Of a stretch of 64,000 bases of DNA, positions 28,057 through 56,389 are shown piece by piece. Under the pieces are notes generated by a model, which was not told the origin of the DNA, did no database searches, and saw nothing but the letters and a program-made list of their open reading frames with translations. The stretch covers positions 171,459 to 235,458 of IMG/VR virus record IMGVR_UViG_3300031997_000001. One strand, written 5' to 3'. The translations under genes and the position numbers were made by a program. The number at the start of each line of letters is the position of its first letter. Within the stretch, counting starts at the first letter, position 1.

Positions 28057-28079
28057 CCGTATTGGCGCTCCCGTCTGGT

Positions 28080-28301
28080 CTACTTGTACCAGACGTTGAG
28101 GCCGAAGGACGCCCGGCCGCTGAAGCCGGGGATCTTCGCGGTGCCGGTCGCCACCAGGTTGGACTTCCCGGTGCTGGACGGGCCGAGGTCCTGCGTCATG
28201 TCGACGCGCAGGACGAGCTCGGTGCCGACGACCTCGACGCGGATGTTCCGGGGGGCGCGGACGATCTTCGCGACCTTCTCCGCCTGGATGAGTGCCTGCA
28301 T
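28080..28301 (-). CDS. small basic protein (DLGPSSTGKSNLVATG family), paralogue 2
   Basis: GGAGG RBS, ATG at 28301; similar to 25621-25860. Confidence 0.75.
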   Translation of the reverse strand: MQALIQAEKVAKIVRAPRNIRVEVVGTELVLRVDMTQDLGPSSTGKSNLVATGTAKIPGFSGRASFGLNVWYK

Positions 28302-28337
28302 CGCATCACCTCCGTGAAGGGGGACGCAAATTCGCCT

Positions 28338-28444
28338 TCCCGAGCTCAGGAGACTCGGGAGCCGGCGCAAGATCCCGCTTCCTCTGGCTCGGGGAAGCGG
28401 GATCGCGTGCCGTGGGCGCCCACCCAAAGATCGGGTGGGCGCCC
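28338..28444. other. three tandem perfect hairpins
   Basis: Stems 28338-28344/28354-28360, 28371-28382/28393-28404 (12 bp) and 28414-28425/28433-28444 (12 bp). Confidence 0.7.
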
Positions 28445-28460
28445 GGTCGGGTCGCTGTGT

Positions 28461-28793
28461 CTACCGGCCGGCCTTGCAGGCGCGGCACTGGCGCACGTGC
28501 CAGAGGTCGCCGGTGTACAGCGTGCGGACCGCGCCGCACGCGCACCGGATGTCCACGGCCTGCTGCCCCCGGGCGGGGCACTTGCGCAGGGTGCCGGGGA
28601 TCATGTGCGGGTATTTGGCCAGCAGCTGCGCCTCCGTCAGCGGGGCGGCGCGGACCCAGACGGGGCGGGGGCCGACGAGCGGGGCGGCGGGGCCGGCGAC
28701 CAGCGGGGCGCGGGCGGGGGGGGGGGGGGGCCCGACGAGGGCGGAGACGCGGCGGACGGCGACGGGCGCGGCGGGGGCGAGGAAGCCGACCAC
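28461..28793 (-). CDS. KYPH-type Zn-ribbon protein (paralogue 4)
   Basis: GGAGGTGTCCC-GTG start mirrors GGAGGTGTACC-ATG of 26345; LLAKYPH...DLWHVRQCRAC. Confidence 0.7.
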   Translation of the reverse strand: MVGFLAPAAPVAVRRVSALVGPPPPPARAPLVAGPAAPLVGPRPVWVRAAPLTEAQLLAKYPHMIPGTLRKCPARGQQAVDIRCACGAVRTLYTGDLWHVRQCRACKAGR

Positions 28794-28814
28794 GGGACAC
28801 CTCCGTTGTGTGCC

Positions 28815-29095
28815 GGGCCGGCGGGCCGCGGGCGCGCCCCCGGGACAGGCGGGGGCGGGACGCGGGGCCGGACGCGGCGGACGCGGGCGCGCCCCCCGGA
28901 CGGCGGGGGGCGGGCGCGGGGCCGGGGTCGGGGTCCCCCCCCCGCCGGGGGCGGGGGGCGGGCGGCGGGCGGGCCCCCCGGCGGGGGGGCGGCGGGGCCG
29001 CCGGGGGCGGGGGGCGGCGGGGGCCGGGGGGCCGGGGGGCCGCGCCGCCCCGCCCCCCCCGGGGGCCGCGGCGGGGGGCGGGCGGGCGGTCCCGT
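28815..29095. other. almost pure G/C low-complexity tract (possible base-calling artefact)
   Basis: Very few A/T, long G and C runs; the many overlapping ORFs here are spurious. Confidence 0.7.
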
Positions 29096-29123
29096 TTCGG
29101 ATCGCTTCTCGGCGAGCGCATCG

Positions 29124-30611
29124 CGTACGCGGAGGGTTCGAACTATGCCGCTGATCGTCAGTTTTGAACCAAAGATAGGACATGAGGTTATCGCAGCTCT
29201 GCGAAGGTTGGCGCCGCATTTCATATGACAAGCTCGCCTCACGACTGGCTGAGGCCGTCATACTCGGACTCAAGCGGCACTTCATCCCAAAGAGCAAGAC
29301 GGAACTGTCGAAGAATACGACGTTCTATATAAAGGTCGCCAAATGGGACAGAGATCCATGGAATCCGCCGCCTAAAGCAGCAGCAGTAGACATCCTCCCC
29401 CCAGACACCACGAAGCTCATTCAGGACATGTTCAAGGACACCCTGACACATGTAGCTAGGGATTTTACTCTCCGCGTAGAAGTAAAGGATGTTCAGCTCT
29501 GGCACGCGGGCTTGGCGTTTTTACGCCGTTCTGACGACGAAGCGGACATATCTATCAACATTTATTGTCACCATGAGTGGGAGCTTGGATGGGGAGGAGT
29601 GCAAAAGAGTTTGAGCATGACGTATAAGAGCGTTGCACAAGTCCTGCGGCATGAACTAGAACACCTGAGGCAATATGGATCTGGTGAAAAGCGCGACGCC
29701 TATGACGCACGTAAAGACTGGTTCGCGAAATCAATGGTCAGGAACCTCGCCCCACGCGTCGTGTCTATGCCCCACTACGGCAATGCTAAGTATTATAACT
29801 GGATCACGGACGTTCACGAAATAGGTGCAATGGTTACGGACATCCATTTCAGCGCACGAAGAAGGGGAGTATCGTTCGAAAAAGAATTACAAAGACGCCT
29901 AGCGGAAGATGAGAGAAGGCTGAAGGAAGAGGGGATCCCGGACGATCTGATTGCAGACATCACCAAGAGATGCTGGGATTTCGCAGCGAAGAAGTATCCA
30001 GGACTCATTAAGAAGCAGGTACCCGAACTGAAATCCTCGGAGCCGGTTGTTCCTCCGACCGGATGAGATCTCCTATAACGAAATGCGGGACTGCGGCTCA
30101 GGCATCCAGAAGGTCCGGTTCCCTCCAGGCCGCTGACCAGCAGTTTTTCGTGATTTTCGTCGAACTATGCCGCTGACCTGCTGGCTAGCCTTTCTCGCGC
30201 GTCACATGCGTACGTGGAGGGTTCGAACTATCCGCCGGAATTGAGGCTGCCGGAGACGGGTGAACTGGGTGCCAGACCGGAAGACAAGTTCCGGGCACCC
30301 AGGTCACCACCAAGCGGAAGTCCGACGCGAGTGAGTGGTGGAGGTGAGGGTAAGAAGCTGGATGGCATCCATCCGCTGTTCACAAAACCTATCTGGATGC
30401 TTCCGCACACGAGCAGGTTGTACAATGCGTATTCAGGAGAAAGGCCCTGTAGGACCTGTCCGCACCAGGGACAGAACCGGTGTCCGGTGGCGTAGTTGAC
30501 CCCGCCGGACTGCGAATTCGAAAGCTGACATGTGCAGTAAGGCACGCCCTATTTACGCGGGAGGCAGGGATTCCGGACGCGTCGCACGCGCACGCGTTGC
30601 CTTCGAACTAT
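29124..30611 (+). repeat. four direct copies of TCGAACTAT, with longer shared flanks
   Basis: 29124-29154, 30160-30176 (17 nt identical), 30209-30236, 30602-30611. Confidence 0.7.
29182..30066 (+). CDS. HExxH metallopeptidase-like protein with MRLxxLxE N-terminus
   Basis: VLRHELEH, later HEIGA; starts MRLSQLCE. Confidence 0.65.
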   Translation: MRLSQLCEGWRRISYDKLASRLAEAVILGLKRHFIPKSKTELSKNTTFYIKVAKWDRDPWNPPPKAAAVDILPPDTTKLIQDMFKDTLTHVARDFTLRVEVKDVQLWHAGLAFLRRSDDEADISINIYCHHEWELGWGGVQKSLSMTYKSVAQVLRHELEHLRQYGSGEKRDAYDARKDWFAKSMVRNLAPRVVSMPHYGNAKYYNWITDVHEIGAMVTDIHFSARRRGVSFEKELQRRLAEDERRLKEEGIPDDLIADITKRCWDFAAKKYPGLIKKQVPELKSSEPVVPPTG

Positions 30612-30936: not shown

Positions 30937-33354
30937 CTAGGACGCACAGGCCCGCTCACATCTCTGTCTGCTCGCGGAGGCAATCCGCCTGTCGAGCGCT
31001 AGCTGGTCCCCCTTGAGCGGATAGCCGATCCGCCTTATGACTCCAAAGTATTCCCCTACGACGTCATGGCCGCACCAGTTCATGTACCTATCGTGTGTAT
31101 CTCTCCAGGCGGACCGGTCGCCGTAAAGGGCGTTGACGATGGTATTGTCTCTGGGATTCTGCAGGTCGTAGAGGTCCCGCTCGTGGAAGACGCGCCAGGC
31201 CCAGAAGTCCACCAGCCAGCGGCCGTCGATGAGGCAGAAGTCGTGGCCGAGGTCCTTAGCGACGATCACCGCGCTGTCGTTGGCCGGCCATCCGTGCTCG
31301 CGCCCGTGGGTGTAGCCTATCTGCTGTCCGTTGAACTCCCAGGTGAAGATGGCGGCGGTCCAGGAGCACATGCCGTACAGATCCCTTCCCGTCACGGGGT
31401 CCTTGACGAAGCCATGCGCGCACTCCCACCTATATTGGCGGCGGAGGCGCGCGAGCTCCCTCCGGATCTCCCTAGGCTTGTTCACCTTCGGGGTCCTCCG
31501 CGTTCGATCTTCTTGCGCATGGCCTTGATCTCATCCGCGTCTAACAGACAGGCCCCGGCAAAATAGTGGTCCCGGATGCGGTCGTGCGAGCGCGCCCTCG
31601 CGAGACATCTGCCTTCCGCCCACCGCAGTGCATCAGCCAGGACGGCGCGGATCAGGACTGCGGTGGACGCGATCCTCCGCCCTTGCGTCTCATGGGAACG
31701 CCCCTTGACGCATCGCTCTGCATATTCATGCGGATCGATCATAGTCTCTACCCCTTGACTTCCTGCGCAGGCGCGGTAGCCTTGATCAGGTGGCGTATCT
31801 GGTCGACGTCGTACTGCGCCTTGATCCATCCGTCATGGGACTTGCCGCCCGGGGCGAAGTCGGCGCTCCCGCTCATCCACTGGACGAGCCCCCATGCCAG
31901 GTGGAGTGCCTCCTTCAGCCGGCTAGTCTCCGTGTCATCCAATTTCGCTTTCAGTACGTCCCGCTCAGTGCAGTACTCCAGTCTCGCTTTCAGGGCGTCC
32001 CGCTCAGTGCAGTACCGGCGCGCCTCCTGATTGGCTTCCGAGAGGCTGGCCTCCAGCGCGGCTATTCGTTTGGATGACTGTTCCGCCTCGACCGCCATCT
32101 CCGTGAAGAGCCTTGGATCTATCATGGATTAGCCCCTAAAGAAGTATATCAAAAACCCGGGTCAGGAATGTCGTGAGATATCTAGTTCCAGTTCCGAAGG
32201 GTCATAATGGCCCACCGTCCCATCCTCGTGCTGGACTTCGTAACAAAGGCCGTGGGAGTCGTGGTGCTTGAGGATAGTCCCCTTGACGCCCCATTTCCTG
32301 GACGCCAGAGCTTCTCCGGTCCAGTCACCGCGGCCAGACCAGAAAGGCTTTGTGGTCTTCACCTTCGTACCGGGGTCCAGAGGGGGCCATTTCTTCACGT
32401 CGGGTGTATGGTCAGCAAGGCCGCCAGCAGGGATTCCAGGGTTTTGGCCTTCCACGATCCCTTCTACGAGCTTTTCTGCCTCGGCTATGTTGACCCTGAC
32501 GTCATAAGCTACCCGCCCGAACGCCAGGGATTCCGCTATCCACTTGATCAGCGGACGAAGCTTGGGATCGTCCAGCTTTCTGATCCTGTCAATGGCCTCC
32601 TCGCGGGTCAAGAGAGTGAAGTCGATGTCCGCTTGTGCGCCCTCGCGCCATGCAGCGCCCTCTGCCTTCAGCGCATCTCGCTCAGCAGTCAGAGTGGCGA
32701 TGCGTTTCTCGTATGCGGCCTCCACACAGGTTATCCGAGTCCGCAACATATCGCATTCCTGCACTAGACCGTTTACTCCGGCCTTCAGTGCATCCCGCTC
32801 GTCGGTCAGTGCATCAATTCGCGCCTCGTGACTTGTAGGGTCGCCCACTTTGTGCCTCCTGGTTACTTGATGACGATCTTGTGCAGTGCTTCCGCGGCGA
32901 TGTGAAAGCAGGGTCCAGCTGGCGAAAGGTCGCATCCGGGCCCGTCTTCCTTGCAGACCGCCTGGAGGGCGGCTACTGCTAAGTCCAGCTTCTCGGTCAG
33001 GGACCTCTCGGGTTCCAGCCGCAGGAAGCGTAGCTGCGTAGGGCGCAAGCCGAGGTCAGGATTTTCTGGCACAGTACTCTTCCTTAATAGTGCTGTGGCA
33101 ACAGGGCCGATCCAGTGACCTCACCGTCGAGGCGTACTCCGCACAGTTTGGCTCTTTCGCCTGTCCATCCGGGCCAGCGACCGCTTGAGCCTGGACGCCT
33201 GGATGTTGACGATCTTGGTGCCGAGGTAGTTGCCCTCGGGGCCTCTGAATTCCACGACAACCTCTATCCGGCCCTTGCACTCGTAGTACCAGGACTTGGC
33301 ATCGATCTTCTGAGGTCCCCGGCGCCCCAGGCTGCATCTCGTCTGTCTGGTCAT
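30937..33354 (-). CDS. run of hypothetical genes (30937-31485, 31748-32125, 32162-32935, 32863-33072, 33121-33354)
   Basis: Tiled ORFs; recurring coiled-coil motif [TA]ERDALKA. Confidence 0.55.
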
Positions 33355-34204: not shown

Positions 34205-34783
34205 TTTATCCTCCTGATGGCTGGTCCGTGGATTCCCGGAGGGCAGAAACGCTGTGGACTATGTCGTCCGCCGGGAGGCCGCACAAGCGGCAGGGTTCCT
34301 GACCGGCGAAGCGCTCCGCCTTGCCGTCAAACCCGTGCATCTTACACAGGGCTCGCTCGAGCTGCTGGACCCTCTGGCGAAGAGCTTCCGCGGTCGATTC
34401 CTGGAATCCTTGGGCTGTCATGTTAGATCACTGAAAGCTGGTCCGCAACCCGTGCTTCGGACAGGTCTTCGCTTCCCATTTCTCGCCCTTCTGAGGCAGG
34501 CGCAGCTTCCTGCTGGTCAGAGCACGCCAGGCAAGCCAGAGGTCAGTCAGCCTCTTGAACATCTTTATTCCTCCGACTGGATAACAATCCCTACCAGTGA
34601 AATACGGGTCCGAGAAGCATATCGAACTAGGTATGACACTGACATCTACACCATCTATCATGACAGAGGTTGTGCAATTCTGTTTTGCACCACCTACTTC
34701 TTTTCGTGCGATGCTTGCGCTTCAGTTTGGATGCTTTCATATTTCATCGAGGGCCTGGGCATTGCCGCCCAGGCCCTCTCTAT

Positions 34784-35398
34784 CTAGTCAATCGGCTCCC
34801 ACTTCAAGATCTTGAACTTGCCGAACACACCGCGGTAGGTCCCGATCCCGATGGCGTAGCCACCCTCCTGGATCAGGTTACGGATCTGCACTTCCTGGAT
34901 TTCGGTATTCGGAAGAATTGTCAGCTGGAACTCGAGCTCCCAAGGCAGCGGGAGGACCGGCCGGACCTTCGGGTTCGGCACCCCATCCTTCAGCCGGGCA
35001 ACCCGCCGGTCGATGTAGCAGCCCGACAGGGCGTCCTTATCCCCGTCGAACTTCCCGAACTTGATCGGCTGATTGTCCTTCAGGAAGGGGATCATCATCG
35101 GCTCGATGATGGTAAAGGAAAGGCACGAATTCGCAATCGACAGCCCCTTCTTGCCCCGCAGCCGCCTGGGCGCCGACACCGTGTTCTTGGCCGACAGGAA
35201 CGAGTGGATGTTCGCCGCCGGGAGGCAGATGTTGCGCTCTTCGTCCAGGTAGAGCTTCTGCATCGGCTCCAGCTTCGTGTCGTTGTCCCCGGCGTACCGG
35301 TCGAACATGACCGCCGTGATGCCCTGAAGCCGGACCAGCCGCCTGATCATGTCCTTCGTGCCGGCTTCCGCGACGACCGCCTTCGATTTCGCAACCAT
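34784..35398 (-). CDS. stand-alone Cas7-like RAMP protein (204 aa; Vipr-like)
   Basis: First strand VRLQGITAVMF, ICLPAANIHSFL helix motif, WELEFQL strand, C-terminal G-rich loop GGYAIGIGTYRGVFGKF; GGAG RBS 8 nt before ATG 35398. Confidence 0.8.
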   Translation of the reverse strand: MVAKSKAVVAEAGTKDMIRRLVRLQGITAVMFDRYAGDNDTKLEPMQKLYLDEERNICLPAANIHSFLSAKNTVSAPRRLRGKKGLSIANSCLSFTIIEPMMIPFLKDNQPIKFGKFDGDKDALSGCYIDRRVARLKDGVPNPKVRPVLPLPWELEFQLTILPNTEIQEVQIRNLIQEGGYAIGIGTYRGVFGKFKILKWEPID

Positions 35399-35417
35399 TG
35401 ACGGATCTCCAAAAAAG

Positions 35418-36003
35418 AAACCCTGCCTTGCCGCGCCGAGCCCGGCCAGGCCCTGCCCGGCAGCGCCGCGCCAAGCCTTGCCGTGCCTCGCCGTGCCGAA
35501 GATTCCTTTGTAAAAGCTAGCCTTGCCTCGCACTGCCCTGCCTCGCCCAGCCAGGCCGGGCCGGGCCTGGCCCCGCACCGCCTGGCCCCACCGGGCACCG
35601 CCTCGGACAGAAGATCTTGTAAGAAGAGCTGGCCTTGCCGTGCACTGCCGTGCCTCGCCCCGCCGGGCGCGGCCATGCCCTGCCTCACCTTGCCTTGCCT
35701 CGCCCAGCCGTGCCAGGCCGGGCCCGGTCAAGTTGGCAGTCAATGTTTCGTGTTGTAAGAAGAGCTAGCCTTGCCTCGCTGCGCCCTGCCCCGCCCCGCC
35801 TTGCCGCGCTTTGCCTCGCCCGGCCCGGCCGCGCCCCGCCCTGCAAAGCCCAGCCACGCCGTGCCGTACCTTGCCCGGCCGCGTCTTCACGTAATGCTTC
35901 TTGTAAAAGAGCTAGCCTTGCCTTGCCTTGCCCTGCCCCACCTGGCCCAGCCTCGCCGCCGCCTTGCCTTGCCTGGCCGCGCCCGGCCCGGCCGAGCCGT
36001 GCC
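35418..36003 (-). repeat. five-block GGY-NN pentamer array (putative guide-RNA array)
   Basis: Blocks 36003-35913 (18 units, one is 6 nt), 35880-35766 (23), 35724-35630 (19), 35602-35518 (17), 35497-35418 (16); 84/93 units begin GGY; linkers 20-41 nt all contain TTACAA. Confidence 0.9.
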
Positions 36004-36015
36004 CCGACTCAGACA

Positions 36016-36504
36016 TTACTCCAGCAGCAACATCGTCGCGGGCTTCATGTCCAGCTTCTTCTGGAGCGCGATGCAGGTCTCCAGCAGCCGCTCTCCGACC
36101 TTCGGCGACTCGATCTTCTTGTGCAGGCCCATCTTCGTGACCGCCGCGTTCAGCACCGCCTTCTGCTTGGCGTCGAGCGCCGTCATGTCGATGACAGCCA
36201 GCTGCCCGATCGTCTTCCTCGCCTTCCGGCCGATCCTCTGGCCCGCCTCGTCGGCCACCCCGACCGCCTCCTCGTTCGAGACCCGCTTGATTCCCACTCC
36301 CCGGATCGGACGCCAGAAAGCACGCTCGCGCCAGAGGGTCTTCAAGGCAGAGGCGACCACGTGTGCACCATTTCCGGCCAGCCGATGTGTGACTTCCGAC
36401 AACTTCTCATGCGACACAATCTCACCGACCGGCTTGCTCCGCAGGAACCGGATGAGTTCCTCCGTGTCTGCGGAACGCCGGAAGGCCGGACTCTTCCCGT
36501 CCAT
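36016..36504 (-). CDS. putative winged-helix DNA-binding protein heading the array operon (162 aa)
   Basis: GGAGG RBS, ATG 36504; helical N-terminus then FWRPIRGVGIKRV wing-like hairpin; stop lies 12 nt before array block 1. Confidence 0.6.
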   Translation of the reverse strand: MDGKSPAFRRSADTEELIRFLRSKPVGEIVSHEKLSEVTHRLAGNGAHVVASALKTLWRERAFWRPIRGVGIKRVSNEEAVGVADEAGQRIGRKARKTIGQLAVIDMTALDAKQKAVLNAAVTKMGLHKKIESPKVGERLLETCIALQKKLDMKPATMLLLE

Positions 36505-36551
36505 TTCGTGCCTCCCGAAAGGATTGTCGAAAACCTTCACCCAACTAGATC

Positions 36552-37633: not shown

Positions 37634-38215
37634 TCATGGGCGTCCTACTTTCCTGAGTGCGGCGTGCAGGGCGGCGATATATTCCTGCTCGAGCCCCACA
37701 TCCGTGCCGCTCAGCACCTCAAACAGGAGCTTGGACTCCTCCCCATATACCTGGACGAAATCCGCCGGCGCATCGCCCATTTCCAGGAGGTTGTCCGTCC
37801 GGTCTATTAGCTTGATCAGCTTAGCCTGCACGGAGGCGGTAAGCAGGTGATCCCGGTCCATCTTCTTGCGTTCGGCCCGGGGCAGTTCTGGGTGCTGCTT
37901 GGACGGATTGGTGAGTTCCAGGACCAGGTCGGCCACCCGCTCGCCGAAATGACACTCATCGCCAGTCTTCTTCCCCAGGAAGTAGTCAGTATGGAACGAG
38001 AGCCGTATATCGCGCGGGCTGGCCTGGGGGCAGTCCTCCAGCACGTCATGAAGCCACGCCGCACAGACGCCTTCCTCGGTCCCCAAGGGATGACGAGTCA
38101 GGCGGGCAGCCACCCGGGCGGGGTGCACAATGTACGGGGCACCGGTATATTTACGGACCTGCTGCTGGTGGTAGCCAGCCGCCACGCGCGCTGCGATCAG
38201 GATGTTGTTATTCAT
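37634..38215 (-). CDS. RelA/SpoT-type HD hydrolase (small alarmone hydrolase/Mesh1-like)
   Basis: H..Q.RK..G.PYI.HP..VA, AAWLHDVLED, V.ELT, IKL.DR.DNL. Confidence 0.85.
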   Translation of the reverse strand: MNNNILIAARVAAGYHQQQVRKYTGAPYIVHPARVAARLTRHPLGTEEGVCAAWLHDVLEDCPQASPRDIRLSFHTDYFLGKKTGDECHFGERVADLVLELTNPSKQHPELPRAERKKMDRDHLLTASVQAKLIKLIDRTDNLLEMGDAPADFVQVYGEESKLLFEVLSGTDVGLEQEYIAALHAALRKVGRP

Positions 38216-41929: not shown

Positions 41930-44147
41930 CATTCCTGGAACGGCTGGAACAGGCGATCAACGAAGTCATTTCCGGGCGCCATGCGATGGCTCTCGATCCG
42001 CGGACGTTCTTCGATGTAAAGCTTACCAATGACCGCTCGGTCGGTGACATCATCGAGGTGGACTGGCGGGCCGAGCTCAAGCATGACAAGCCGGATTTCG
42101 GCAAGAAGAGGCCCATCGCGGCGGATGGCGTTGCGGTCGCGGCTCCGGGCCAGAAGGCAGAAATAGAAGTCCTGGAGTGGGAAGTGGGCGGCGTGACGAT
42201 TCCCAAGAACCTCTGGCACAACAACGTCCGCGGCGAATGGGAAGCCGCGATCGAGAAGGACGTGCGGGCCGCCGTAGCGAACCTGGCATCGGAGAAGAAG
42301 GCAGAGGTGCCGCCTCCGCTCCCTAATGCTGCTCCTGAGGAGCCGCCTCCACTTCCTTCACGCACTGGATACCCAGAGTCTTTACGGCAGAGACTAAATC
42401 AATTGCTGGGCGAGGTTTGATGCCCGGCGAGATCCCGACAAGCTTGTACTGGAAGTTGTAGATCATCCTCCGTATGCATCCGTGGCAGACCCAGACATAG
42501 GCACCATCCCACTTATCTTCTGTGCGTTCGGCCACGCCCTGGCAGTACCTGCAGGTTGTTTCCATGGCGGCATCAAACCACAAGATTCGTTTGGCGTCAA
42601 TAATTCACTGTCTCGTATTTAAAAGCCATGTCTCCCATGCCTCTATCTGGTTGGGCTGGAGTCCAGGGCGGCCAAGGCGGCAACCAGGGTCGTTATGTGC
42701 AGAAGGCCGCAGACTTCCAGGCTATACAGAAACTCAACGATGGTCCTCCCCTCTCAAAAGATGGATATAGACAGTTCTTCTCCAAGAAACAGAGTTCTGC
42801 GGGAATATTCTTCACCGCACTAGACAAAAAGTGGAACAAAATCGGTATAACCATCCGGGGGCAGATCGATACGGACTTCGGTCCCTCCTGCATCGCTAAG
42901 GTGATGGACCTATCCGAGAAGGACGAAATTCAGAAGATCGCAGAATCGCTCGAAAAGAAGACGATGGTCTTCAAGATCAAGATAACGAACATGGGCACGC
43001 CTTATGAACCGGCCCTGGTCGTCAAGAAGACAGTGGACGTGCAGGATAGCTGGAACGGGCTTTGCAACATCCTCCTCGACGACATTACCGTTGGGCCGAT
43101 CAAGAGCAACTGGAATGTTAATATCGTGGTCACGCGGGAAGGAACTGATCCGCAGGATACCTTCGAAGGTACGTTTAATTTGAAGGATATGGAGGTATTT
43201 CTTCCGCAGGTCGCGGAGGAAATGCGAGAGGAAATGCAGGCCCAAAAAGAAGGCGCGCCAAATGTGCAAAAACAGCTCGATGAGGCGATGAAGAATCTCG
43301 AGTCGATTACGAAGGCCGTAAAAAAGCTCCAAAGTCCTCTCACCGTCCTAGATCCAAATACGTTTGAGCTAGTTCCGGCGCCACAAATGCCTGTCCAGCC
43401 AAGCGCGGCAACCCTGCCAGGCGTCATCACCGCTGAGGTCCTGAAGAACTGCGATATGGCGACGCTGCAGAAATTGAAGCAGCTCGGCATCCTGCAATTG
43501 GAAAGCAAGATCCTGCAATTGGAAAGCAAGCAGGTTCCTATTTTTGGCGACCCACTCTCCCCTCCCGCGGTCATAGACAAGCCGTCGGGATTGCCGCTTG
43601 GCAAGATGGGAGGCAGAAAGGTGGATCTAACATGAGCCCGTTAGCAGAACTCATCAAGAAATGGACAAGCAAGAAGGGAAAGGCAAGTATCCTCCCGAAG
43701 CCGATCACAGCTCCCGGAGCTGTCAATCCTAATTGGAATCCGTTGGCGGTAGACGAAGAAGTCTACATGCCTCTGGGCGTACAAGGGCTTGTGGGCGGCC
43801 CGGGAGTCCAGGGCTGGCAAGGGTCTGTGGGCTGGCAAGGGTCTGTGGGCTTGCAGGGTCTTGGAGGCTACCAGGGAGGCAGTCAGGGCAGTTGGGGCGG
43901 TTGGACCCCTGGTAATCAGGGGTTCAATAACCCGCCGCAGGCGGTCCAGGTCTCCGTCTCTTCCGCCCCCGTGAATGGGGTCAGGGAGGTCACGCTGACT
44001 GCAGAGGGCCTTGGCAAGAAGATCTCCATCCAGGGATTTGGCGTGCTGGTCTGGGACGGGAAGGAATGGCGTCTGGACGGGAGGAAGGCGGGCGAGATAG
44101 CTTCTGGTCCGATCGGCGAACTCGGAAATCGGATCATTTCTTTCTGA
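41926..44147 (+). CDS. hypothetical proteins 41926-42420, 42628-43635 (21-nt tandem duplication at 43489-43530) and 43632-44147 (Gly-x-Gln-Gly repeats)
   Basis: Long clean ORFs; GxQG repeats include an 18-nt tandem DNA repeat. Confidence 0.65.
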
Positions 44148-55321: not shown

Positions 55322-56389
55322 CTACTCGTCCTTGATCTCTTTCAAGAGACTGTCGATTTCCGCATCCGCGATCGGCCCGCCATCCGCCGGTGATTCCTCA
55401 GGTTCCGGCGCAGCCTTAGCCGCCGTGGCGGGCTTCGCCGGCTTGGTAGGGGCTTCCTCCGTAACCTCGTCCTGGAATTCCTCTGCAGGAGGAGCGGGTT
55501 TGGCTGCCGCAGGCTTTGCGGCCGGAGCAGGCTTGGCTGCTGCTGGCGCGGGTTTGGCTGCCGCAGGCTTCGCGGCCGGGGCGGGCTTGGCTGCCGCGGG
55601 CTTTTCCTCCGTGTGGTCCTCATGGAATCCGGCATCATCGCCAGCGGTGGTCGGCGACTTCTTCAGGATGTTGTCCACCTTCGCCTGGAGCGCTGCCAGG
55701 TCGCGTGCGGCGAACTTCGTGGGCACGTCATGCCGCCTGGACAGGATCTCCTTGATCTTGGCCTCGTCCTTGGACAGGGGGCCCTTGGTCGTGACCAGGA
55801 ACTTGGACTCCTCGTAGTTGTTGTAGCCGCCCTTGCTCTTGATGACGACCTTCATGACGTACCCGGCCTTCTCGTCGTAGAACAGGCCGAACGGCGCGGG
55901 ATCGTCCTCGCTGCCGGCATCGTCCCGCAGAATGCACTCCTCGCACTTGTCGTAGAGCGTCTTCGGGATGTTGGCCCAGAAGACCTTGCCGCGGAGGTCT
56001 TCCTGGACGTTGGTAGACTGTGGGAAGTAGATGTTGACGCCGTAGTAGCTCCTGGCGAGGTACGTCTTGGCGATCTTGCTCTTCTGCTCCTTGTCCATTC
56101 CGTCCATCAGCTGGAAGCCGAGCTGACAAAGCGGGCACTCCGCCCCCTGTTCATGAATGCGCGGGCATTCCAGCCGCTTCATGTCCAGGAAGTGGCTGCC
56201 GTTCATGTAGAACCAGAGGTCGCCCATGCTCGGAACGGGCGGTAGAAACTTGATGTAGTAGGTGAGCGTCTCGTTTTCCTTGGCCTTGGGGAACCGGAAC
56301 TCGTTCGGATCCTTCTGCCCGCCGCCCTTCTTGTCCTGCATCAGCTTGCGGATCCTGGCAATGTCCTCGTTCTCGCGGATCACGGTCAT
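55322..56389 (-). CDS. T4 gp32-like single-stranded DNA-binding protein with AAKP repeats and acidic tail
   Basis: IKFLPP, H...CP...ECP.C, YYGVNIY, GKVF, GYNNYEESKF, acidic C-terminus. Confidence 0.8.
   Translation of the reverse strand: MTVIRENEDIARIRKLMQDKKGGGQKDPNEFRFPKAKENETLTYYIKFLPPVPSMGDLWFYMNGSHFLDMKRLECPRIHEQGAECPLCQLGFQLMDGMDKEQKSKIAKTYLARSYYGVNIYFPQSTNVQEDLRGKVFWANIPKTLYDKCEECILRDDAGSEDDPAPFGLFYDEKAGYVMKVVIKSKGGYNNYEESKFLVTTKGPLSKDEAKIKEILSRRHDVPTKFAARDLAALQAKVDNILKKSPTTAGDDAGFHEDHTEEKPAAAKPAPAAKPAAAKPAPAAAKPAPAAKPAAAKPAPPAEEFQDEVTEEAPTKPAKPATAAKAAPEPEESPADGGPIADAEIDSLLKEIKDE

What the first reader, a model, noticed from the sequence alone, without database searches (positions are those of the whole stretch)
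35418..36003. The NN dinucleotides spell five different non-repeating codes: candidate gapped targets
Read by hand, 5'-3' on the minus strand. B1: AC TC CG CG GC CA AA AA [GGC] GA TG CA GG AG AA AA AA TA. B2: CG AA AC AC GT TG TT AG GG GC CG CG GA AA GC AA GG GG AG GC GA AA TA. B3: CC CT AC TG GA AA AA GA AG AT CG CC GG GA AC AG AC AA CA. B4: GG CC GG CA GG GG CA CC CC CT TG GA AG AG GA AA TA. B5: AC GA AC AA TT GC GC CG AG CT CG TC GC AA AG TT. The blocks are not copies of one another, unlike a slippage-derived satellite. Inference: if the target is read as NN-x-NN-x (every third base skipped, as I recall for VIPR), a guide in phase with a coding strand would ignore wobble positions and resist synonymous escape.
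Basis: partly seen in the sequence, partly recalled or inferred. Interest (0 to 1): 0.85.

Follow-up and report, generated by a model that had tools for sequence, protein, structure and literature searches.

The report
Phage VIPR guide-RNA array
This is a set of five guide RNAs and their small Cas7-like partner protein (a VIPR system, first described in 2026) carried by a 235-kb phage; it is a clear new example of a known kind, but I could not find what its guides target.

Summary
On the minus strand, window 35418-36003 holds five blocks of GGC-NN pentamers (16-23 units each). GGC is fixed, the NN strings differ between blocks, and four blocks end in the same handle and short tail. Directly downstream lies a 204-aa gene (34784-35398). 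Its confident model matches Cas7-type RAMPs, and its family profile matches SUSP1 Vipr, including the residues that grip GGY. All 99 related loci carry same-strand pentamer arrays beside this gene. This is therefore a VIPR locus (vipr plus vrRNAs), a system published in three 2026 preprints. Among close relatives NN strings are either replaced outright or conserved while tails and GGY stay fixed, so they behave as guides, not as drifting microsatellite.

No target was found. The window, about 1 Mb of related loci, and ten exact-seed scans of viral and metagenome collections gave only chance-level matches. One weak candidate remains: B4 units 1-11 match 21 of 22 positions, but out of codon phase.

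Differences from the studied SUSP1 system: no conserved accessory gene, a short unstructured tail, longer guides, and the last guide abutting the vipr ribosome-binding site. Verdict: new member of a known kind, of moderate interest.

The parts
35913..36003 (-). vrRNA block B1: 9+9 GGC-NN units with a register slip (extra C at 35958)
   Evidence: It starts 12 nt after the stop codon (36016-36018) of the upstream gene.
35901..35912 (-). B1 3' tail, GCTCTTTTACAA
   Evidence: conserved with the tails of B2-B4.
35766..35880 (-). vrRNA block B2: 23 units; internal GGCGA GGCAA at units 13-14 resembles the 3' handle
35753..35765 (-). B2 3' tail, GCTCTTCTTACAA
35630..35724 (-). vrRNA block B3: 19 units
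35617..35629 (-). B3 3' tail, GCTCTTCTTACAA
35518..35602 (-). vrRNA block B4: 17 units; the first 11 look like guide, the last 6 are purine-rich and handle-like
35508..35517 (-). B4 3' tail, GCTTTTACAA
35418..35497 (-). vrRNA block B5: 16 units, gene-proximal. It ends GGCAA GGCAG GGTTT and lacks the B1-B4 tail.
   Evidence: Arrays lie upstream of vipr in 79 of 99 loci.
35399..35417 (-). Leader between B5 and the vipr start codon, containing the ribosome-binding site GGAG (35407-35410)
   Evidence: The predicted hairpin pairing the end of B5 with the RBS is not significant (z = -1.06).
34784..35398 (-). vipr: 204-aa stand-alone Cas7-like RAMP (thumb hairpin about residues 128-149; G-loop 184-194)
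   Evidence: AF2 model pLDDT 89. The top 50 PDB fold hits are all Cas7-type RAMPs. hhalign to SUSP1 Vipr: probability 88%, E 3e-6. The top PDB sequence hit is 'SUSP1 Vipr protein'. More than 2100 homologues.
34749..34778 (-). Perfect 12-bp GC-rich hairpin 5 nt after the vipr stop codon; possible end of the transcription unit
   Evidence: Read directly from the sequence. The consensus scan did not call it a terminator because it has no T-run.
36016..36540 (-). Upstream 174-aa gene: weak candidate accessory protein, possibly winged-helix
   Evidence: Virus-only family with faint HTH resemblance, TM 0.42-0.46. One homologue sits in the same position in L009 only. It is not a conserved neighbour.

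Best explanation
Window 34749-36003 (minus strand) is a VIPR locus of a large phage: five vrRNA genes followed by the vipr gene. Shown here: the GGC-NN arrays, their shared 3' handle and tail, the RAMP fold of the 204-aa protein, its homology to SUSP1 Vipr with the GGY-gripping residues kept, and the universal array-gene linkage. Inferred from the published SUSP1 and P. fulva work: the strand is transcribed, probably together with the upstream operon, and cut into five RNAs. One Vipr protomer binds each pentamer, flips out GGC and presents NN. The filament reads double-stranded DNA as NN-x-NN-x and silences the bound gene of a rival phage, prophage or satellite. With 11-21 informative units the footprints would be about 32-62 bp. 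Because B5 ends 19 nt before the vipr start codon, next to its RBS, Vipr loading on B5 may also limit its own translation. That last step is speculation.
For: The arrays are far beyond chance. Vipr candidate: pLDDT 89; the top 50 PDB fold hits are all Cas7-type RAMPs (Csm3, Cmr4, type VII Cas7), including 6IFN_E, the VIPR paper's own query; the top BFVD hits are phage RAMP-like proteins. hhalign to SUSP1 Vipr gives probability 88% and E 3e-6, with R138, W178, R179 and D177 aligned to R146, Y188, R189 and T187; R146 and R189 are invariant in the family. 'SUSP1 Vipr protein' (36pp) is the top PDB sequence hit. My caller recovers the four published SUSP1 vrRNAs. It finds same-strand arrays beside the gene in 97 of 99 loci, and the other two carry relaxed GG-NNN arrays. 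Across 196 arrays, entropy is 0.17-0.48 bits at GGC and 1.87-1.95 bits at each N. In close relatives (vipr 90-97% identical, tails 91-100%) NN identity is at random level in 9 of 12 comparisons and at least 0.89 in 3. The carrier is a phage.
Against: No target was found for any of the five guides. No transcription or processing evidence is available: no sigma-70 promoter or terminator and no ribozyme on this strand. There is no conserved vap accessory gene. The tail is short and not detectably structured, unlike the SUSP1 pseudoknot cap. Sequence similarity to SUSP1 Vipr is low (26% over 133 columns) and its N-terminal part aligns poorly. B1 has a register slip that a strict 5-nt filament would not tolerate.
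Confidence: 0.88

Rival explanations
1. It is a slippage-derived pentanucleotide microsatellite with no function of its own.
For: Unit-level duplications do occur: L035 and L038 have identical vipr genes but arrays of 16 and 23 units. Runs of GGCAA occur in many arrays.
Against: GGC is fixed while NN is near maximum entropy. The blocks are not copies of each other. Handles and tails are conserved. Strand-specific linkage to one protein family holds in 99 of 99 loci. NN turnover is bimodal, not gradual.
Confidence: 0.02
2. The locus is a VIPR relative that does not use the 1-nt skip rule or does not target DNA of rival elements. It might read RNA, use another spacing, or mainly regulate the phage's own genes outside the window.
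For: No target was found under the 1-nt rule. This clade differs from SUSP1 in tail, accessory gene and guide length. The rule was shown experimentally only for type II. About 171 kb of the phage's own contig could not be searched.
Against: The thumb and G-loop residues that set the geometry are conserved. The published searches applied the same rule to types III and V and found hits for 44 of 63 and 23 of 39 guides. My searches needed exact seeds and could not reach the host genome, so a negative result is weak. Skips 0, 2 and 3 did no better locally.
Confidence: 0.08
3. The pentamers act as DNA, for example as iterons or binding sites for a phage regulator or replication protein, not as RNA guides.
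For: The locus sits in the DNA-metabolism module of the phage. No promoter was detected.
Against: The arrays keep a fixed strand orientation relative to vipr in all but 8 of 242 calls, which a symmetric DNA site would not need. The partner protein is an RNA-binding RAMP. Homologous arrays are shown to be RNAs bound by Vipr.
Confidence: 0.02

Closest known systems
Type II VIPR of Escherichia phage SUSP1 (KT454805; bioRxiv 10.64898/2026.04.26.720920, .720927 and 2026.10.15.759431)
   Same: Phage-borne. Small stand-alone RAMP (195 aa versus 204 aa) with the same thumb and G-loop residues. Same-strand GGY-NN pentamer arrays flank the gene, with a constant 3' end on each RNA.
   Different: GGC here versus mostly GGT. 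All five RNAs lie upstream, versus 1 upstream and 3 downstream. 16-23 units versus 6-15 called in SUSP1 (9-16 as published). A 10-13-nt unstructured tail versus a roughly 40-nt pseudoknot. No vap1 homologue. Only 26% identity over 133 aligned columns. Targets unknown.
Pseudomonas fulva prophage VIPR (same papers)
   Same: Same system kind. Its guides mostly hit resident prophage regulators, which is the sort of target expected here.
   Different: I did not have its sequence, so there is no direct comparison. It is described as close to SUSP1 (type II).
Class 1 CRISPR backbone: Cas7 (Csm3, Cmr4) on crRNA
   Same: Same protein fold. One protomer binds per RNA repeat interval, and a thumb breaks the guide-target pairing periodically.
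   Different: No repeat-spacer array, no cas genes and no adaptation module nearby. The period is 5 nt with 2 read, not 6 with 5 read. The guide is built into the repeat itself.
TIGR-Tas tandem interspaced guide RNA arrays
   Same: Guide information is interleaved with short fixed repeats in a tandem array.
   Different: 18-nt period and a different effector protein, as summarised in bioRxiv 10.64898/2026.10.21.760802. Neither is present here.

Membership tests
VIPR system | Vipr protein: minimal RAMP with RRM core, G-loop and thumb | tested here: met
   Model pLDDT 89. The top 50 PDB fold hits are all Cas7-type RAMPs. hhalign to SUSP1 Vipr gives 88% probability and E 3e-6. The top PDB sequence hit is SUSP1 Vipr.
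VIPR system | Residues that lock GGY (SUSP1 R138, D177, W178, R179) | tested here: met
   They align to R146, T187, Y188 and R189. R146 and R189 are invariant and T187 is nearly invariant in 34 family members. D-to-T and W-to-Y are substitutions, not identities.
VIPR system | vrRNA: at least 4 tandem GGY-NN units with fixed GGY and hypervariable NN, on the vipr strand, in flanking intergenic DNA | tested here: met
   Five arrays of 16-23 units. Family entropy is 0.17-0.48 bits at GGC versus 1.87-1.95 bits at N. 99 of 99 loci carry arrays.
VIPR system | Invariant, structured 3' tail capping each vrRNA | tested here: inconclusive
   A conserved handle plus a 10-13-nt tail is present in B1-B4 and is lineage-specific across the family. 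No significant structure was found (z -1.1 to +0.6), and B5 lacks it.
VIPR system | Adjacent vap accessory gene | tested here: not met
   No conserved neighbour across 99 loci. SUSP1 vap1 has no homologue. The paper says loci 'typically' have two genes and also reports stand-alone genes, so this feature is not obligatory.
VIPR system | Virus or provirus location, with no CRISPR array or cas genes | tested here: met
   235-kb IMG/VR contig. Phage replication genes in the window. No CRISPR-like repeats.
VIPR system | Targets read by the 1-nt skip rule (at least 80% NN match, skip at the wobble position) | tested here: inconclusive
   No target in the window, in 1 Mb of loci or in ten collection scans. 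One out-of-phase candidate remains.
VIPR system | vrRNAs expressed and bound by Vipr | not testable with these tools
   Needs small-RNA sequencing and a pull-down.
VIPR type II (SUSP1 / P. fulva clade) | vap1 gene, pseudoknot tail and close Vipr phylogeny | tested here: not met
   No vap1, no pseudoknot-like tail, and only a remote Vipr relationship. Which of the other six types it belongs to cannot be read from the text; the figures and tables are not held.
CRISPR-Cas | Repeat-spacer array with 25-40-nt repeats, plus cas genes | tested here: not met
   Only 5-nt periodicity. No Cas families among the neighbours.

The most novel reading that the evidence does not exclude
This very large, mostly metagenomic family (more than 2100 clusters at 90% identity) may be a distinct, minimal VIPR form. 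It would have no accessory protein and no pseudoknot cap. Filament length would be set by arrays of 6 to 74 units. One vrRNA would be built into the vipr mRNA leader, so that Vipr loading feeds back on its own translation. If so, the cap and Vap are dispensable for noncontiguous DNA reading.
Probability: 0.25. Interest if true: 0.55.

Novelty: new member of a known kind. Interest (0 to 1): 0.38.

Why it matters
VIPR is a months-old discovery whose biology has been worked out in only two related type II systems. This locus adds a clean example from a 235-kb environmental phage. It represents a very abundant clade that appears to work with the RAMP and its RNAs alone, with longer guides and a short unstructured tail. 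The family comparison gives independent, sequence-only support that NN strings behave as swappable guides. It also offers test cases for what sets vrRNA length and 3' end.

Tried and rejected
1. Self-targeting: I scanned the window with the array masked at skips 0-3 against 100 shuffled guides. The best matches (57-63% for the long guides) equal the background.
2. Cross-targeting of rival VIPR loci: the five guides and 542 sub-guides from all loci against about 1 Mb. There was no excess at any skip; only poly-A guides scored high.
3. Exact NNx seeds in viral contigs: B5 units 4-13, B2 units 11-21 and 1-10, B3 units 9-17 and 1-9, and B4 units 7-15 all gave 0 hits.
4. Metagenome scans: B5 units 2-13 gave 0 hits. 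B2 units 3-12 gave 1 hit (L102), rejected because only 8 of 26 positions match outside the seed and the skip falls on codon position 1.
5. B4 units 3-11 gave 5 hits (L103-L107), all at one conserved site in a 62-aa ORF. Units 1-11 match 21 of 22 in L103, but the last six units match 2 of 12 and the skip falls on codon position 2. My own estimate is about one chance hit per 18-base seed, and the other guides do not converge there. I keep it only as a weak candidate. A 12/12 match of B2 units 15-20 in L106 does not extend.
6. Ribozyme-interspersed array: no Rfam match.
7. Sigma-70 promoters or terminators on the array strand: none.
8. Conserved vap gene: none.
9. Coding reading: ORFs that run through the arrays (for example 34784-35743) are artefacts of a 5-nt repeat.
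10. VIPR type assignment: not possible, because the figures and tables are not held.
11. The only genome-contig scan went on finding relatives, so host genomes were never searched for targets.

Full report
**Observation.**
Read on the minus strand, window 35418-36003 consists of five blocks of 5-nt units of the form GGC-NN.
- B1: 35913-36003, 9+9 units.
- B2: 35766-35880, 23 units.
- B3: 35630-35724, 19 units.
- B4: 35518-35602, 17 units.
- B5: 35418-35497, 16 units.

The one correction is in B1, where the irregular spot reads GGC GGC before GGCGA, equivalent to GGCGG plus an extra C at 35958. Thirty Markov surrogates of the window produced no array of even 6 units. The blocks are not copies of one another: NN identity is 0.18-0.41. 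B1-B4 share a constant 3' end, GGCAA GGC(T/C)A, followed by GCT(C)TT(C)TTACAA. B5 instead ends GGCAA GGCAG GGTTT and runs into a GGAG ribosome-binding site and the ATG at 35398.

**What 'VIPR' is.**
VIPR (Viral Interference Programmable Repeat) systems were described in 2026 preprints.
- They comprise a small RAMP protein (Vipr) and usually an accessory vap gene.
- Their vrRNAs are GGY-NN pentamers followed by a constant 3' tail.
- One Vipr protomer binds each pentamer and flips out GGY. The NN bases pair with double-stranded DNA while every third target base is skipped.
- Natural targets lie in rival phages, prophages and satellites, mostly in coding sequence with the skipped base at the wobble position.
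- The later preprint shows that this codon periodicity blocks mutational escape.

**The partner protein.**
The gene directly downstream of B5 (34784-35398, minus strand, 204 aa) has no Pfam match and only phrog_4652, of unknown function.
- It has more than 2100 homologues at about 55-66% identity, all unnamed.
- An AlphaFold model built on 34 of them is confident: pLDDT 89, pTM 0.84.
- Its top 50 matches in the PDB are all Cas7-type backbone subunits (Csm3, Cmr4, type VII Cas7). One is 6IFN chain E, the query the VIPR authors used for discovery.
- In the viral structure library the three significant hits are phage proteins, one annotated as a RAMP.
- I located the SUSP1 record (KT454805). My caller recovers exactly its four published vrRNAs.
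- The family profile aligns with SUSP1 Vipr at 88% probability, E 3e-6.
- 'SUSP1 Vipr protein' (36pp) is the best sequence hit in the PDB copy.
- The residues that the cryo-EM paper shows gripping GGY (R138, D177, W178, R179) align with R146, T187, Y188 and R189. R146 and R189 are invariant in the family.

**Linkage across the family.**
I fetched 99 other loci encoding relatives, from phages, proviruses and MAGs of many phyla.
- A strict GGY-NN caller finds same-strand arrays within 1.6 kb of the gene in 97 of them: 40 on both sides, 39 upstream only, 18 downstream only.
- The remaining two carry relaxed GG-NNN arrays.
- Over 196 distinct arrays (3555 units), entropy is 0.29, 0.17 and 0.48 bits at G, G and C, against 1.87 and 1.95 bits at the two N positions.
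- Interior NN dinucleotides reach 3.84 of a possible 4 bits. The last three units are biased towards AA and GA, giving a semi-constant handle.
- Tails are short, AT-rich, conserved within a locus and different between lineages.

**Do the NN behave as guides?**
I compared pairs of loci whose vipr DNA is 90-97% identical, with tails 91-100% and GGY 83-100% identical.
- NN identity is at random level in 9 of 12 array comparisons (median 0.32).
- It is at least 0.89 in the other 3.
- A Burkholderia phage group keeps its guide across 11% vipr divergence.
- Unit-level duplication also occurs: L035 and L038 have 16 and 23 units.

**Targets.**
This is the weak point.
- With the array masked, no guide matches the 64-kb window better than shuffled guides at skips 0-3.
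- The same holds for about 1 Mb of related loci, for the five guides and for 542 sub-guides from the whole family.
- The large collections accept only exact patterns, so I used NNx seeds of 9-12 units and then tested extension.
- Seven viral-contig seeds and one metagenome seed gave nothing.
- A B2 seed gave one metagenome hit. It fails extension (8 of 26 positions) and is out of codon phase.
- A B4 seed gave five viral hits, all at one conserved site in a 62-aa ORF. Units 1-11 match 21 of 22 in L103. The last six units match 2 of 12, and the skipped base is at codon position 2.
- By my own estimate one such hit per 18-base seed is about the chance expectation. The other guides do not converge on those phages.
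I also could not search the other 171 kb of the source contig.
- The negative result is therefore weak, and the skip rule is untested for this clade.

**Anatomy and differences from SUSP1.**
- No ribozyme and no sigma-70 promoter or terminator was found on the array strand.
- B1 starts 12 nt after the upstream gene's stop codon, so co-transcription with the upstream operon is likely (inference).
- A perfect 12-bp hairpin sits 5 nt after the vipr stop codon, at 34749-34778.
- The tails show no significant fold.
- No accessory gene is conserved next to vipr, and SUSP1 vap1 has no relative in any locus.
- The upstream 174-aa protein belongs to a virus-only family with faint winged-helix resemblance. 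It recurs in the same position only in L009.
- The carrier is a large phage. The window holds NAD-ligase, SSB, exonuclease, polymerase, DnaB and UvsX genes, on a 235-kb IMG/VR contig.

**Verdict.**
This is a VIPR locus, a new member of a known kind.
- It is not type II.
- Its type among the other six cannot be settled, because the paper's figures and tables are not held.
- The family is large and has NCBI members, so it was probably within reach of the authors' PSI-BLAST. I did not verify this.

Noticed in passing
window 34749-34778 (-): A perfect 12-bp GC-rich hairpin with a 6-nt loop lies 5 nt after the vipr stop codon. It has no T-run, so the terminator scan missed it.
   Followed up: partly
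window 28600-29100: Dense G-rich low-complexity tandem repeats (periods 7, 8, 17, 21-27, 55 and 63) overlap long plus-strand ORFs (28062-29228).
   Followed up: no
window 1-64000: GC content falls from about 0.62-0.65 (12-32 kb) to 0.51-0.56 (40-64 kb) within one phage contig.
   Followed up: no
window 43489-43530, 43811-43861, 44049-44090: A cluster of short perfect or near-perfect tandem repeats (21 nt x2, 18 nt x2.9, 21 nt x2) lies within about 600 bp.
   Followed up: no
window 55494-55601: A 54-nt unit repeated twice (90% identical) lies inside the minus-strand SSB-like gene 55322-56389.
   Followed up: no
window 31938-32015: A 39-nt tandem duplication at 89% identity.
   Followed up: no
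L014, L029, L080, L081, L006: Some relatives carry uninterrupted arrays of 40-74 units, far longer than published vrRNAs. They may be the 'staggered' arrays of overlapping vrRNAs mentioned in the paper.
   Followed up: no
L087 (about 1430 to 150 nt upstream of vipr): Eleven short arrays in tandem, each with the same GGATATTTTGATCGCATTC-type tail: the largest guide set seen in this family.
   Followed up: no
L021 and L029: Arrays on the opposite strand lie 3-6 kb from vipr and could be separate or solo vrRNA loci.
   Followed up: no
L035 versus L038 (arrays about 570 nt after the vipr start): With identical vipr genes and tails, one array has 16 units and the other 23, through duplicated units (GA GT TG). 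Slippage-like expansion therefore also shapes guides.
   Followed up: partly
L080 versus L081: The 3' 33 units are identical, but the 5' end of the array is replaced. Guide turnover may therefore act at the 5' end.
   Followed up: no
L011 and L031: Arrays here use relaxed GG-NNN units (GGA and GGC mixed) rather than GGY, within the same Vipr family.
   Followed up: partly
L103 1466-1654 (-), with the same site in L104-L107: A conserved 62-aa phage ORF carries the only near-full match to a guide: B4 units 1-11 match 21 of 22, out of wobble phase. This cannot be told apart from chance.
   Followed up: yes
window 37634-38215 (-): An HD-domain phosphohydrolase gene lies about 1.6 kb upstream of the array.
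   Followed up: no
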